64,000 nt of DNA, taken from NCBI RefSeq assembly GCF_036588685.1, contig NC_086373.1, positions 47,492,001 to 47,556,000 on the forward strand. Direction: 5' to 3'. Numbering within the stretch: position 1 is the first letter of the stretch; each line of letters begins with the position of its first letter. The notes beneath the pieces were generated by a model. That model did no database searches. It was not told the DNA's origin and saw nothing but the letters and a program-made list of their open reading frames with translations. A program made the position numbers and the translations under genes. The stretch comes from Mytilus trossulus (taxonomy: Eukaryota). Positions 1 to 38,109 of this stretch are shown here, piece by piece.

Positions 1-480
1 CCGATTCATATGAAAATAATAAGCGGTCGTCAGGAAGAGGCGCACAGTAAGTTTCCATAGGAATGCCGACAATTTGTTGGAAAAGTCTACCTCAAAACTC
101 AACAAATATGTTGTCGATAAGAAACTCCAGCATACTGACCACTTGTACTTCTGTGTAGCATGTTTTATCTTTTTGTTTGGCACTATTAACGAAATATGCC
201 TTATGATATCCCAAAGTAATAAATTTATAACGTATGCTACCATTTTTTTTTTTGAAAGGCATTGTGGATTATTTCTTTTAGGCGATTTTTCAATTTCACA
301 TGGGCTATGGTGGTATACAGGGTTGAAAAATCAAAAGTTTTGATAAAACTAATTTCAGAGAAAGACCGAATTGTTTAGAAGTTCTTTAGAATTTTTAAGA
401 ATCCACATTTGCGCGAGTAAACAGTTTCACAGTATTTCTGAAGACCCTCTTTAACTGCGGTCATAATTTTAGTCAATCTA
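1..480 (-). mobile_element. Degenerate Penelope-like element (PLE) reverse transcriptase fragment
   Basis: Manual minus-strand translation across frameshifts gives TAVKEGLQKYCETVYSR..MWILKNSKELL..IKTFDFSTLYTTIAH..MLEFLIDNIFVEF*GRLFQQIVGIPMETYCAP..LFSYE. These match the PLE RT motifs FDFSTLYT and QQ.vGIPMG.NCAP. Stops and frameshifts are present, and the fragment runs off the window start. Confidence 0.9.
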
Positions 481-589
481 ATGGACAATTTCTACCTCAG
501 GCATAGTATTTGGCAAAACTTTTAGGAATTTCGGTTCTCAATGCTCTTCAACTTCGTACTTTATTTGGCCTATTTAACTTTTTTTATTC

Positions 590-645
590 GAGCGTCACTG
601 ATGAGTCTTTTGTAGACGAAACGCGCGTCTGGCGTATATACAAAA
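590..645 (+). ncRNA. Type I hammerhead ribozyme, copy 1
   Basis: CTGATGA at 598-604; stem II GTCT/AGAC (605-608/614-617); GAAA at 618-621; stem III CGC/GCG (622-624/632-634); GUA triplet with predicted cleavage after 636. Stem I is weak or not obvious. Confidence 0.8.
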
Positions 646-953
646 TTTAGTCCTGGTATCTATGATGAGTTTAATTACTACCACTGGGTCGATGCCCATG
701 CTGGTGGAGATTTATTTCCCCGAGGGTATCACTAGCCCAGTAGTCAGCACTTTTGTGCTGACATGAATTGTCATTGATATGGTTATATTTATAAATTTAC
801 TGTTTACAAATTTTTGAATTTTTTTAAATACTAATGCTTTTCTACCTCAGGCATAGATTACCTTAGCTGTATTTGGCAAAACTTTTAGGAACTTTGGTCC
901 CCAATGCTCTTCAATTTCGTACTTTATTAGGCCTTTTTAACTTTTTTGGATTC

Positions 954-1009
954 GAGCGTCACTGATGAGTCCTTTTTAGACGAAACGCGCGTCTGGCGTA
1001 TATACTAAA
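954..1009 (+). ncRNA. Type I hammerhead ribozyme, copy 2
   Basis: CTGATGA at 962-968; stem II GTC/GAC (969-971/979-981); GAAA at 982-985; stem III CGC/GCG (986-988/996-998); GUA triplet with predicted cleavage after 1000. Confidence 0.8.
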
Positions 1010-1135
1010 TTTAGTCCTTGTATCTATGATGAGTTTATTGATACACCTCATGTCTAAAAAATTGTTAAAATTATAAATCATACCAGTGCATGCTTGTTTA
1101 GATATAATGAAAAAAAGTATTTTGTTATTTTTTAG

Positions 1136-1465
1136 GTTATATATATCATGGCAGGAATAGGATACAGACCAAACTTTTTTGAAAAATACTTCCGCATTGT
1201 TGAAAAGGTTGCATTGCATGGAAATCCGATCATCGACTCGTTCCCTACAGATCACAAAGACATAAAAATCACTTTACCTGCACATGTGGAAGCAATGAAG
1301 GTAAATGGGTTAGTTTCCGAAAACGCGTCCGATGGTGAGGTTTTTGCAAGTATTGCGACTTTAAAATTAGCATCAATGTATCTGAGGCGGGGAGTTCAGG
1401 AATCAGCTGTAAAAAGAACAAGAAAGCCAAAAAAATATAGTCAGCGAATTGCCTATGACTTCTGA
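1136..1465 (+). CDS. Probable terminal coding exon of an unidentified gene whose upstream exons lie outside the window
   Basis: Polypyrimidine tract and TAG acceptor ending at 1135; phase-0 open frame VIYIMAGIGYRPNFF...RIAYDF* (109 aa plus stop) with protein-like composition; AATAAA signals at about 1533, 1543 and 1702. Family not recognised. Confidence 0.6.
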   Translation, partial: VIYIMAGIGYRPNFFEKYFRIVEKVALHGNPIIDSFPTDHKDIKITLPAHVEAMKVNGLVSENASDGEVFASIATLKLASMYLRRGVQESAVKRTRKPKKYSQRIAYDF

Positions 1466-3366
1466 AGTTGGTGATGGATGCAAAGATTTGGAAATATTGT
1501 TAGTCGCAAGAAAGGGTTTTATAGGGAAATGCAATAAAAGTAAATAAATCTAAATTTATTTCAGTGGAGACATTTGTATGAAAAACGTTTTTTGTCTGAC
1601 TAGTTTATTTAGTGATTCATAGACATGTGATGGTATGTCAATGTATTTAGAAGTGTATCATGTAGCGTGTTTATCTATTGTCTTAAAAAATCATTATACC
1701 AAATAAAATTATTAGAATTAGCTATCAAAGTCCTTATATTTGAATGAAGTAACATTCATTTTTAGTGGAAAATTGTTTTAACGTTAATTAAGCTATAATT
1801 AAAAAATGTTTGCTAAACCCTCTCTGTGATTAATGTAAGATAACTCTGGTCAATTTTCCCAATCACTCTTTCATTAGGGGGAGATAAAATATTTCGATGA
1901 TGGAAGTATTCAACGACCTTGACTGGATATACATACCTCATTGTTCATTTATAGTCTTTTAAAAAAAAAATTCTTTATGTTGGTATAGATTAATTTTATA
2001 CATTACAAAACAAATAAATGAAATTATATATATTTTTTTTATAAACCAATAAAGAACACTAAGATGTAGTACATTTATAAATTTTGGAGCAATTTAAAGC
2101 TCAATAAAATAGACATAAAGACCAGTTCAAGGTAGACAATCAACATTGACTTTTTTGGAATTGAACATAGTACAAAGGAATGCAACTCTTGCATACAAAA
2201 GATACATCAAAAGAATTATTAAACACGAATTCGTGCGCCACCTTCAATAACGATTCTAAACTATCATTATGACCAACAGTTGTAAATCTATAGAATAGTG
2301 ACAGCTAATGAATGCTAACCCACAGTGAAATACATTTGTTAGAATTTTTTAAAACCTACTCGTAAAAATGCACAAACTACTTGATTTCCATAGATCAAAA
2401 TTAACATGTTTACACATTGATAAAATATGGTGGTTAAACATTATAAATCTATAACAGTATGAGATTCAATATGACCTCGTATACTAGCATCAACTTACCC
2501 AAATATATATGTATAAAAAGCCAAATCATTTTGTATTTGTTTACATTAAAATCCATCTTGGAAATTTTAAAACTTATCACAAATCCCGGTTAAGATTTGA
2601 CTAAATACCAACATCCAGATATGTTCAGGTAAATATGCTAGTGTATTTCATCATTCATTGTGTATTTTGTTTTGTAAATATAGTTCACTAGATTTGGCGA
2701 TAAAAAGTTTTAATTGTTTCTTATTTTACAATTTAAGTAGTATTCTTTACCAAAACACATCATCATCATCATTCAAAACAAATTGCACTTATTTGACTGG
2801 ATGGTTCCTATGCTCCATGTTTATACTCAGTGGGGAGTATTCTTAGTAGTCGAACTGCTGTCAACACCGAGGTTGTGATTTGGAAACTCGCATGTGACAG
2901 GTGATCTAGACTCCAATCTTAATTTACTGGGAGTGTCTGTTTTTCTACCGAAGGTTATGTGTTTTTATTCAAAAGGTCAAACACATCAAACGGATGGAAA
3001 ACAACTTGCATATTCCTGACTTGATATAGGCATTTTCTTATACAGAAAATTTTGAATAACCTTGTTTTAAAACTAGCTTAACCTTTCACTTTTATGACTG
3101 TAGAAGACCAATCCATTATATTGACCATGATGTGTGAACACAATAAACAGACATAAAAGGTAAATGATGTGTGAACACAATAAACAGACATAATTTGATA
3201 AAAGGTATAAATAACAAATAAGGGGTACAGCAGTCAACATTGTGTTATAATCTTCATCCATGTAAAGCACTGACAAGTGATCTGATGGTAGATACCATCG
3301 GATTAACAATCTACCAACATAAGTAATGAAACGTTGGTGATTCATTTACAAACTGATAAACGTTTT

Positions 3367-4170: not shown

Positions 4171-7323
<3,153 letters not shown>

Positions 7324-35075: not shown

Positions 35076-36294
35076 AATTTCTATAGATGCAAGTCTAAAA
35101 TATGAAACACATTTAACTGTATCTGTTGTATACTTTATTTCAATTTCGATGTAAAATCAACAAAAATCTTCTTTAAAATCTGTTGGAAAATGTTTAATCT
35201 ACCGAACATGTCTCAGAAAAGGAGAAGAAGTGCTAAAATCTACTACCATTGAACATGTAAAAATCATTTACTCCTTTTTTAACTGTGATTAGAACTCGAT
35301 ATATTCTCAATAATTGAAATGCTATTTCTTTGTTATATTTTGATTGTATTCTTTGTCACTAATAACCGTTTGTGTATACTAGCAAAAATAAAGTATCATT
35401 ATCATCTTGCTTTGAGTTGGAATGTTCCTCGTATTAGATCTAACTTTTTGTTGAGATGTCTTTGTCTGTTGTTGTTTTTTTTGTTTTTTTTCTTATCATT
35501 ACAAGTGTTTGGTGTACATGAAATTTGTAAATCAGGCCGTTGCTTTATAGATCCTAAACTTCGATTTTTCCTTTTTCTTTGCAGACGTTTGTCAAAACGT
35601 TGTTTTGGTTGTCTCTGCTTGGTCGTATTTTCACCCAAAAATGTATTGCGCGAATATTTTGCATGACTATAGTTTGTGTTAAATTTAGTAATTCACTGTT
35701 TTGGTGTTGCTTTGTATAATCTGTCGACCCTTTCACATGCACTTAATGAAACATGTAGTGGATTGTAGGATTTTCTCCTCTAACAAATCCAACATACTCC
35801 AAACAAGAAGTTGTAAGTCTTGATAACTATAATTTCATCTCGATTCATATTAGTCGACACATTAGTCAGCGTTTCGTGGTCAGACTCATTTGGTCAGACT
35901 GCAAGTTGTAGAAAGTTCTTGAAAGCTTATCATAGCGTATATAATAACTTATCATTAAACCCCAACGTATGCACCATCTCTATATGTATTCGGTCAAACC
36001 CTAAAACTTATAATCTTTGATTTGTAGTAAATATGGGAAACTTTTACCACAAATTTTCAGCTCGGTTCAGAAATGAAACTCGACTTGCTAAATTTTTTTC
36101 CAGATGGGAGTGACACTACTACATATTATTTTCAAAACTTCAAAATAAAAGGATTTCCTACCTCAGAAATAGAATAACCTTTATTGTACATTTGCGTCCT
36201 TCGACATCATAACAATTGTTTCGCTATTTTGCCTTTTGATCTTTTTTTTATTCGATCGTCATTGATTAGTCTTTTGTTGACGAAACGCTCTTTT

Positions 36295-37570: not shown

Positions 37571-38109
37571 CTTTTGGCGTATACGATTCTAATCCTGGTA
37601 TCTTCATGACGAATTTATAGTTCTTTAAACTAAGAAAATTCACACATCTTATCTTATAAACTTAACGAATACAGAACGAATAAATAAGCAACAAGTCGAG
37701 CACGGAGACGGGAAAGTACGCGATAAAAGGGTAATTTCACCTCGCTGATCCCATAACTAACAACAGAGACAGTAAAATAAAATATAAGAAACTAAGCATG
37801 AAAAAAGTTCAACGTATATAAAAAACGAATAAGGAATTAATAAATAATAGAGTATCAGTCGAGTGCGGAAACGGGAACGCATGCGTCAACAGGATATGTT
37901 AGCCTCCTTGAACCAATAACTAATGTTCAGCAGTCAAGAAAACAGAAGAAAGCATTTAAACGGATCGATAGCAAACAAGTAATAGCGAATTATAACGGAT
38001 AAGTAGCGAATAAGTAACAGGGTACATTTATGAGTCAAGTTCAGCACAGAGACTGATATATAGGTGCATGGCACCAACGTAAACAAACATCGAAGAACTT
38101 AATTAACAT

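What the first reader, a model, noticed from the sequence alone, without database searches (positions are those of the whole stretch)
489..1037. Tandem hammerhead ribozymes define a 364-nt retrozyme able to release a circularisable RNA
Seen: two complete hammerhead cores (CTGATGA, stem II, GAAA, stem III, GTA) with predicted cleavage after 636 and 1000, a 364-nt monomer with no coding capacity. Established: tandem type I hammerheads define retrozymes, non-autonomous retroelements that accumulate as small circular RNAs in metazoans including mussels. Inference: this copy has both cores intact and could be active. The ORF track gives no hint of it.
Basis: partly seen in the sequence, partly recalled or inferred. 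Interest (0 to 1): 0.8.

Follow-up and report, generated by a model that had tools for sequence, protein, structure and literature searches.

The report
Old copy of known mussel retrozyme

Summary
Window 489-1037 holds two real type I hammerhead motifs 364 nt apart (592-635 and 956-999). Rfam Hammerhead_1 scores them 32.5 and 32.8 bits, E about 3e-6, just under the curated cut-off of 34.

Helix I is GCGUCA/UGGCGU, with 6 of 6 pairs. Helix III is the palindrome ACGCGCGU. Cleavage follows GUC, after 629 and 993, not after GUA at 636 and 1000. The predicted monomer is 630-993, still 364 nt.

The element belongs to the published Mytilus galloprovincialis retrozyme family (Cervera and de la Pena 2020, PMC7229834). 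Three of the four published primers match exactly and the fourth has one mismatch. The 51-nt ribozyme block equals that of the clone that self-cleaves in vitro, and that clone's marked cut site is GCGCGTC|TGGCGT. The genome holds thousands of copies, and this scan has noted the family many times on other DNA.

Like its relatives, the copy ends at the fixed family 3' end, 44-50 nt past the cut site, and starts at a variable point.

RNA reads cover the family heavily. The downstream flank is silent, the upstream flank carries only low-depth reads that look paralogous, about 1% of reads fit this copy at 99% or better, and its private letters are in the minority. Nothing shows that this copy is active.

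Verdict: already known, low interest.

The parts
489..1037 (+). Whole genomic copy of the retrozyme: 1.5 units, made of a 5'-truncated partial unit, one full unit and a 44-nt 3' tail
   Evidence: BLAST of the monomer against the window: 489-629 = unit positions 210-364 (84.5%, with a 14-nt deletion after 506), 630-993 = 1-364, 994-1037 = 1-44 (95.5%). Direct repeats.
592..635 (+). Hammerhead 1 (type I). Helix I 592-597/630-635; core CUGAUGA 598-604; helix II 605-608/614-617 with loop UUUGU; GAAA 618-621; helix III palindrome 621-628; cleavage 3' of C629
   Evidence: RF00163 32.5 bits, E 3.9e-6. Identical to 38 of 46 family motifs sampled and to the ribozyme block of the published clone Mg353. 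Primers 109D and 109R abut at 629/630 with 0 mismatches.
956..999 (+). Hammerhead 2 (type I). Core intact. Private changes C972 and U976 remove the fourth pair of helix II and alter loop 2. Cleavage 3' of C993
   Evidence: RF00163 32.8 bits, E 3.2e-6. This variant was seen once among 46 sampled motifs. 80-98% of RNA reads carry the family letters at 972 and 976.
630..993 (+). Predicted 364-nt monomer released by double self-cleavage; 36.8% G+C, no ORF
   Evidence: Cut sites. Circular MFE -80.4 kcal/mol, 60% of bases paired, z = -1.9 against 100 dinucleotide shuffles. Primers 110D (0 mismatches) and 110R (1 mismatch) lie inside it.
994..1037 (+). 3' tail ending at the family's fixed 3' terminus (...UAUCUAUGAUGAGUUUA)
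   Evidence: In about 18 of 22 independent insertions the copy ends 44-50 nt after the last cut site, while the 5' start varies from unit position 1 to 321. The tables show the same asymmetry.
1..490 (-). Context, not part of the retrozyme: the inner end of an inverted, 5'-truncated Penelope-like element that abuts the retrozyme's 5' end
   Evidence: About 88-90% identical to more than 2000 first-look candidates. The copy runs from 1252 nt before the window to 490. Other copies continue past the equivalent of 490 into an ORF with a weak RVT_1 match, and a GIY-YIG match lies upstream of it.

Best explanation
Window 489-1037 is one old genomic insertion of the published Mytilus non-LTR retrozyme family, a non-coding, non-autonomous retroelement. 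The predicted pathway is as follows. If the + strand were transcribed, each type I hammerhead would fold into helix I GCGUCA/UGGCGU, a 3-4-bp helix II and a very short palindromic helix III. Each would cut after GUC, at 629|630 and 993|994, and release a 364-nt RNA with 5'-OH and 2',3'-cyclic phosphate ends. According to the 2020 paper, a host tRNA ligase of the RtcB type closes such RNA into a circle. The circle or a multimer is then copied into DNA by a borrowed reverse transcriptase, probably that of a Penelope-like element. That copying would start at a fixed site 44-50 nt downstream of the cut site and stop at a variable point more than one unit later, which gives the 1.5-unit layout seen here.

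Shown here: the motifs, the helix assignment, family membership, copy number, the fixed 3' end with a variable 5' end, and abundant family RNA. Taken from the literature: self-cleavage in vitro, circular RNA in vivo, and ligase-mediated circularisation. Inferred: that this copy's two ribozymes would cut. This particular copy looks like a relic. Its two arms differ by 6-9% plus a 14-nt indel, its nearest relatives are 94% identical, and RNA reads give no sign that the locus is transcribed.
For: - Motifs: Rfam type I hammerhead matches with full-length model alignment and all six helix I pairs.
- Published sequence: supplementary table 2 of PMC7229834 gives clone Mg353 with the cut site marked GCGCGTC|TGGCGT. 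The 51-nt block window 587-637 is identical to it when read.
- Published primers: 109D, 109R and 110D match with 0 mismatches and 110R with 1.
- Published biology: the paper reports about 5000 such hammerheads in repeats of 350-390 bp, kobs about 0.1 per min, and abundant circular RNA in gonad and mantle.
- Copy number: the window's own genome gives 5025 first-look candidates, the best at 94% identity.
- Ends: fixed 3' end and variable 5' end in 22 insertions.
- RNA: depth of hundreds over 470-1072 in three raw-read runs, and zero over 1073-1875. Reads of other expressed families share only the block 590-636, which is exactly the ribozyme from helix I to helix I.
- G+C is 36.8%.
Against: - Both motifs fall just below Rfam's curated cut-off (32.5 and 32.8 against 34 bits; one search finds nothing at gathering).
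- The copies are too alike to give covariation.
- The free-energy minimum recovers helix I but not the whole hammerhead.
- Read ends do not pile up at 629/630 or 993/994 (table 6), so the cut site is not confirmed by RNA here.
- Circularity could not be tested, because the genomic 1.5-mer already contains the junction sequence in linear order.
- No target-site duplication was found.
Confidence: 0.92

Rival explanations
1. One reading: stem III is CGC(GCGUCUG)GCG, cleavage follows GUA at 636 and 1000, and this copy is an active source of circular RNA.
For: The letters CTGATGA, GAAA and GTA are present, and 622-624 can pair with 632-634. The 364-nt spacing is the same under either parse.
Against: - This parse has no helix I: after A597-U637 the next three positions are C/A, U/U and G/A.
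- The covariance model aligns the motif the other way, with a fully paired helix I.
- The published clone marks the cut after GTC, and the published abutting primers meet at 629/630.
- No read ends pile up at 636/637, and the loose ends at 636 are where diverged families stop resembling this copy.
- At this copy's private letters 66-98% of reads carry the family letter, and the downstream flank is silent.
Confidence: 0.03
2. The hammerheads belong to the neighbouring Penelope-like element, as part of its pseudo-LTR, and not to a separate retrozyme.
For: A Penelope-like fragment abuts the element at 489/490. Canonical Penelope-like elements carry hammerheads in their terminal repeats (PMC8557442).
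Against: - Nineteen other copies of that element share nothing with window 491-3000 except chance retrozyme fragments.
- The element continues past the equivalent of 490 into its own ORF, so 490 is a truncation point and not its terminus.
- The element is inverted relative to the hammerheads.
- The 364-nt unit occurs at thousands of loci without it.
- Elements with this domain order (Naiads) are reported to lack canonical hammerheads.
Confidence: 0.03
3. The retrozyme copy and the inverted Penelope-like fragment entered together in one event, with both DNA ends of one staggered break priming reverse transcription on two different RNAs. That would explain why their two variable 5' ends meet head-to-head at 489/490.
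For: - Both elements point their fixed 3' ends outward and meet at truncated 5' ends, with 0-2 nt of overlap.
- No Penelope-like sequence resumes after 1037, so this is not a simple insertion into that element.
- Head-to-head inverted 5'-truncated partners are described as typical of Penelope-like insertions (PMC8557442).
- Both copies are of similar age, about 6-10% from their relatives.
Against: - No target-site duplication flanks the composite; the only shared word is an offset 8-mer in AT-rich sequence.
- None of 20 other retrozyme insertions shows the same abutment.
- Both repeat families are very abundant, so neighbouring insertions followed by a deletion are a sufficient explanation.
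Confidence: 0.12

Closest known systems
Mytilus galloprovincialis non-LTR retrozyme (Cervera and de la Pena, Nucleic Acids Res 2020, PMC7229834; clone 'Rtz Genom mussel Mg353')
   Same: The ribozyme block is identical over 51 nt. The unit is 364 nt, within the published 350-390 bp, and the G+C content is low. All four published primers find their sites. The arrangement is a partial tandem, and the genome holds thousands of copies.
   Different: Nothing of kind. This copy is an older and more diverged member, with a 14-nt deletion in its 5' arm and two private changes in the second ribozyme. No RNA evidence ties it to the expressed pool.
Rfam RF00163 Hammerhead_1 (type I hammerhead of newt satellite 2, Schistosoma Sm-alpha and cave-cricket repeats)
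   Same: Open helix I, conserved core CUGAUGA / GAAA / GUC, and a very short helix III.
   Different: It scores 1.2-1.5 bits under the curated cut-off. The 2020 paper says the mussel ribozymes lack most of the loop 1 - loop 2 contact nucleotides and cleave more slowly (about 0.1 per min).
Plant LTR retrozymes (type III hammerheads, mobilised by Gypsy elements)
   Same: Non-autonomous and non-coding, with two ribozymes bracketing an RNA that is circularised.
   Different: The plant elements have true LTRs, a primer-binding site, a polypurine tract, 4-bp target duplications, type III ribozymes and high G+C. This copy has low G+C (36.8%), type I ribozymes, no 4-bp duplication and only the partial tandem repeat of its own unit as a terminal repeat. 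PBS and PPT were not searched here.
Penelope-like elements and their pseudo-LTRs (PMC8557442; bioRxiv 10.64898/2026.07.22.740005 for vertebrates)
   Same: Partial tandem layout, variable 5' truncation, a short tail beyond a fixed point at one end, and hammerhead motifs.
   Different: This element has no ORF. Similarity between this unit and a Penelope-like terminus was not established here: retrozyme-like pieces in 5 of 30 GIY-YIG loci are compatible with chance.

Membership tests
Hammerhead ribozyme, type I | Conserved core CUGANGA ... GAAA ... UH, with three helices of which helix I is open | tested here: met
   full-length alignment to RF00163. Helix I is 6/6 paired, helix II 3-4 bp, helix III ACGC/GCGU, and the cleavage triplet is GUC. 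Both motifs qualify.
Hammerhead ribozyme, type I | Score at or above Rfam's curated gathering cut-off (34 bits). This is an operational threshold, not a structural feature. | tested here: not met
   One search gives no match at gathering. One search gives 32.5 and 32.8 bits, E about 3e-6 in 751 nt. Other copies in the same genome reach 33-41 bits.
Hammerhead ribozyme, type I | Self-cleavage at the predicted phosphodiester bond | not testable with these tools
   Published for a clone with the identical ribozyme block. Read ends are uninformative.
Metazoan non-LTR retrozyme, Mytilus family (PMC7229834) | Sequence homology to the published element | tested here: met
   Primers 109D, 109R and 110D match with 0 mismatches and 110R with 1. 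The 51-nt block 587-637 is identical to clone Mg353 as printed.
Metazoan non-LTR retrozyme, Mytilus family (PMC7229834) | Short tandem or partial tandem unit of 350-390 bp with one type I hammerhead per unit, low G+C and no ORF | tested here: met
   Unit of 364 nt, G+C 36.8%, no ORF of note.
Metazoan non-LTR retrozyme, Mytilus family (PMC7229834) | Thousands of dispersed copies and arrays in the genome | tested here: met
   5025 to 5843 first-look candidates, with arrays of 2 to more than 10 units.
Metazoan non-LTR retrozyme, Mytilus family (PMC7229834) | Expressed as abundant monomer-length RNA, mostly circular | tested here: inconclusive
   Family-level RNA is abundant in three runs. Circularity cannot be read from short reads on a 1.5-mer. 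The downstream flank is silent, upstream-flank reads look paralogous, and this copy's private letters are in the minority.
Plant LTR retrozyme | Type III hammerheads inside true LTRs, with PBS, PPT and a 4-bp target duplication | tested here: not met
   The ribozymes are type I. There is no 4-bp duplication at the ends. PBS and PPT were not searched specifically.

The most novel reading that the evidence does not exclude
The head-to-head junction at 489/490 between this retrozyme copy and an inverted, 5'-truncated Penelope-like element (GIY-YIG upstream of the reverse transcriptase) may be the scar of a single double-primed insertion. If so, it would be physical evidence that a Penelope-like enzyme copied the retrozyme RNA.
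Probability: 0.12. Interest if true: 0.45.

Novelty: already known. Interest (0 to 1): 0.12.

Why it matters
As it stands it matters little. It is one worn member of a repeat family whose ribozyme, self-cleavage and circular RNAs were published in 2020, and which this scan has already met many times in the same genome.

Two points are useful for annotation. First, Rfam's gathering threshold misses this whole subfamily by about 1.5 bits. Second, reading the motif by eye as CTGATGA...GAAA...GTA puts the cut site 7 nt too far downstream, so any junction or primer design should use GUC|UGGCGU.

The fixed 3' end with a variable 5' end, together with the neighbouring inverted Penelope-like fragment, fits the published idea that Penelope-like elements mobilise retrozymes. 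It does not prove it.

Tried and rejected
- Rfam at the gathering threshold over the whole window gave nothing.
- Free-energy folding of 57-nt and 111-nt segments recovers helix I but not the hammerhead, with z-scores near zero. That was no help for or against.
- Target-site duplications at the ends of this copy and 21 others: none convincing.
- 'Goes back' joints in the RNA reads (for example 897->537 and 876->536) looked at first like circle junctions. They keep the repeat register (897-363=534) and are only hops between the two arms by reads of other family members.
- Read-end pile-ups at either candidate cut site: none reached the tool's listing threshold.
- Similarity between the retrozyme and the ends of Penelope-like elements: retrozyme-like pieces lie near 5 of 30 GIY-YIG loci, but in varied positions and orientations, which is compatible with chance given the abundance of both.
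- Test of whether other retrozyme 5' ends abut inverted Penelope-like fragments: 0 of 20.
- Host-gene context: the 105-aa ORF at 1148-1465 has no Pfam match and zero RNA depth, so an intronic, sense-strand setting is not supported by these data.
- The published clone was compared by eye and by primers only.

Full report
**What is there**

The + strand of window 489-1037 carries a 1.5-unit direct repeat. Positions 579-673 and 943-1037 are 94% alike at a spacing of 364. Positions 506-584 and 869-947 are 91% alike at a spacing of 363. Positions 489-506 and 839-856 are identical. A 14-nt piece present in the second arm is missing after 506 in the first arm.

Each arm holds one hammerhead-like motif. 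A loose core pattern finds exactly these two in the 64-kb window, against 0.22 expected. Rfam finds nothing in the window at its gathering thresholds. With an E-value threshold, Hammerhead_1 (RF00163, type I) matches 592-635 at 32.5 bits (E 3.9e-6) and 956-999 at 32.8 bits (E 3.2e-6), each over the full model, against a cut-off of 34. Nothing of note is coded inside: the only ORF wholly inside is a 46-aa one with a TTG start, and a 98-aa minus-strand ORF (959-1255) overlaps only the 3' end. The observation of two hammerheads 364 nt apart with no coding capacity is therefore confirmed.

**Where it cuts**

The covariance-model alignment reads the motif differently:
- helix I: GCGUCA (592-597) with UGGCGU (630-635), all six positions paired
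- core: CUGAUGA, 598-604
- helix II: GUCU/AGAC, 605-608 with 614-617
- GAAA: 618-621
- helix III: the palindrome ACGCGCGU, 621-628
- cleavage triplet: GUC, with the cut after C629

The second motif has the same layout 364 nt downstream, with the cut after C993.

The published record settles the matter. Supplementary table 2 of Cervera and de la Pena 2020 prints the cloned genomic mussel retrozyme Mg353 with its self-cleavage site marked ...ACGCGCGTC | TGGCGTAT.... Their abutting divergent primers 109R and 109D end and begin at that bond, and they match window 605-629 and 630-655 without a mismatch. The monomer is therefore 630-993, still 364 nt, and the sites 636 and 1000 are wrong by 7 nt.

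**What it is**

It is a member of the Mytilus galloprovincialis non-LTR retrozyme family. Besides 109D and 109R, primer 110D matches 760-787 exactly and 110R matches 720-748 with one mismatch. The 51 nt at window 587-637 are letter-for-letter those of clone Mg353.

The paper reports about 5000 type I hammerheads in the mussel genome within repeats of 350-390 bp. It also reports co-transcriptional self-cleavage at about 0.1 per min, abundant circular RNA in gonad and mantle, and circularisation by an RtcB-type ligase rather than by the ribozyme.

The window's own assembly is 1.30 Gb. It gives 5025 first-look candidates for the 364-nt monomer, the best other copies at 94% identity, both as single insertions and as arrays. 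G+C is 36.8%. The circular fold is moderately more stable than shuffles (-80.4 kcal/mol, z -1.9, 60% paired). Earlier notes of this scan describe the same family many times on other DNA of this genome.

**Anatomy of insertions**

I looked at 22 independent insertions whose ends could be read. The 3' end lies 44-50 nt after the last cut site in about 18 of them (...GAUGAGUUUA, optionally followed by UUUAC). The 5' start ranges over unit positions 1, 6, 37, 53, 58, 104, 112, 139, 149, 184, 190, 210, 223, 233, 272, 304-321. The tables show the same asymmetry in further arrays.

The window copy conforms, with its 5' start at unit position 210 and its 3' end at 44. This is the footprint of reverse transcription that starts at one fixed site and runs for more than one unit on a circular or multimeric template. 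That is the model already proposed in the 2020 paper, and another agent of this scan noted the same footprint (s1-826772). I found no convincing target-site duplications.

**Is this copy active?**

HHR1 equals the majority motif (38 of 46 sampled) and the ribozyme of the tested clone, so it should cut if transcribed. HHR2 keeps the core but has C972 and U976, which remove the fourth pair of helix II and change loop 2. That variant was unique in the sample.

I laid three raw-read RNA runs of the same species label and one contig run on window 1-2000 at 90% likeness. The findings were:
- Depth is in the hundreds over 470-1072 and exactly zero over 1073-1875 in all runs.
- Over 1-469 depth is about 0-12, and at the listed positions nearly all reads carry other letters, so they look like reads from paralogous repeats.
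- Only 43, 48 and 38 of 3336, 4243 and 4845 laid reads are 99% or more alike, and 86-87% of reads run on into unlike sequence.
- At this copy's private letters 66-98% of reads carry the family letter. These positions are 532, 536, 572, 585, 674, 698, 733, 835, 892, 901, 915, 929, 972, 976 and 1019.
- Reads of diverged families share with this copy just the block 590-636, which is the ribozyme from one strand of helix I to the other.
- No read-end pile-ups were listed at 629/630, 636/637, 993/994 or 1000/1001, so the reads do not test the cut site.
- The 'goes back' joints (897->537 and others) keep the repeat register and are not circle junctions.

Circularity cannot be read from short reads here, because the genomic 1.5-mer already contains the junction in linear order. 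Nothing shows that this locus is transcribed. Together with the 6-9% divergence between its arms, that points to a relic.

**Surroundings**

Window 1-490, together with 1252 nt before the window, is an inverted and 5'-truncated copy of an abundant Penelope-like element. Other copies continue beyond the equivalent of 490 into a minus-strand ORF with a weak RVT_1 match, and a GIY-YIG match lies upstream of that. This is the Naiad-like domain order described in PMC8557442.

Its truncated 5' end meets the retrozyme's variable 5' end head-to-head at 489/490, and no Penelope-like sequence resumes after 1037. A single double-primed insertion would explain that layout. However, no duplication flanks the composite, none of 20 other insertions shows the same arrangement, and both repeats are very common. 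I keep co-insertion as the most novel reading that is not excluded, at about 12%.

The idea that Penelope-like elements mobilise retrozymes is itself published. It appears as a hypothesis in PMC7229834, and a 2026 preprint (10.64898/2026.07.22.740005) reports homology to pseudo-LTRs in vertebrates.

The ORF at 1148-1465 has no Pfam match and no RNA. An intronic, sense-strand setting, as another first-stage note suggested, is therefore not supported by these data.

**Verdict**

The motifs are real. The helices and cut sites were misread. The family is already known and experimentally characterised, and this copy is an ordinary, old and apparently silent member. Interest is low.

Noticed in passing
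window 1-490 (continues 1252 nt upstream of the window, genome C1:47490748-47492490): An inverted, 5'-truncated copy of an abundant Penelope-like element (GIY-YIG upstream of the reverse transcriptase, about 90% identical to other copies). Its truncated 5' end meets the retrozyme's 5' end head-to-head at 489/490. There is no clear target duplication around the pair.
   Followed up: partly
window 36160-36288 and 37575-37620: A worn second retrozyme copy whose core is mutated (CATTGATTAG in place of the CACTGATGAG seen in the intact copies). It is split inside helix III by an insert of about 1.29 kb with inverted ends TACGGGGCGCC...GGCGCCCCGTA and CTTTT on both sides. The copy ends at the family's usual 3' end.
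   Followed up: partly
L003/L004 (genome C4:69.43 Mb) and L012 (C8:6.15 Mb): Arrays of at least 5 (C8) and up to about 9 (C4) visible units in which every hammerhead has helix III one CG shorter (GAAACGCGTC instead of GAAACGCGCGTC). This leaves a 6-nt palindrome that cannot close as a hairpin on its own.
   Followed up: no
window 590-636: RNA reads from other, diverged retrozyme families match this copy only across this 47-nt block, which is the hammerhead from helix I to helix I. Loose ends lie on both sides in all runs, so several families with a shared ribozyme are expressed.
   Followed up: partly
window 1877-1943: A short stretch with RNA depth of 24-132 in the raw-read runs (word depth 476 in the contig run), flanked by near-zero depth. 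The reads continue into unlike sequence on both sides, so this is a fragment of some abundant transcript or repeat.
   Followed up: no
window 1148-1465: A 105-aa ATG ORF preceded by a polypyrimidine-AG. It has no Pfam match and zero RNA depth in the four runs laid.
   Followed up: partly
L005 1208-1278 (genome C10:52.89 Mb): An inverted retrozyme fragment (unit positions 53-124, 78% identity) lies 90 nt upstream of a 5.4-unit array. This is a head-to-head layout like that described for Penelope-like elements.
   Followed up: no
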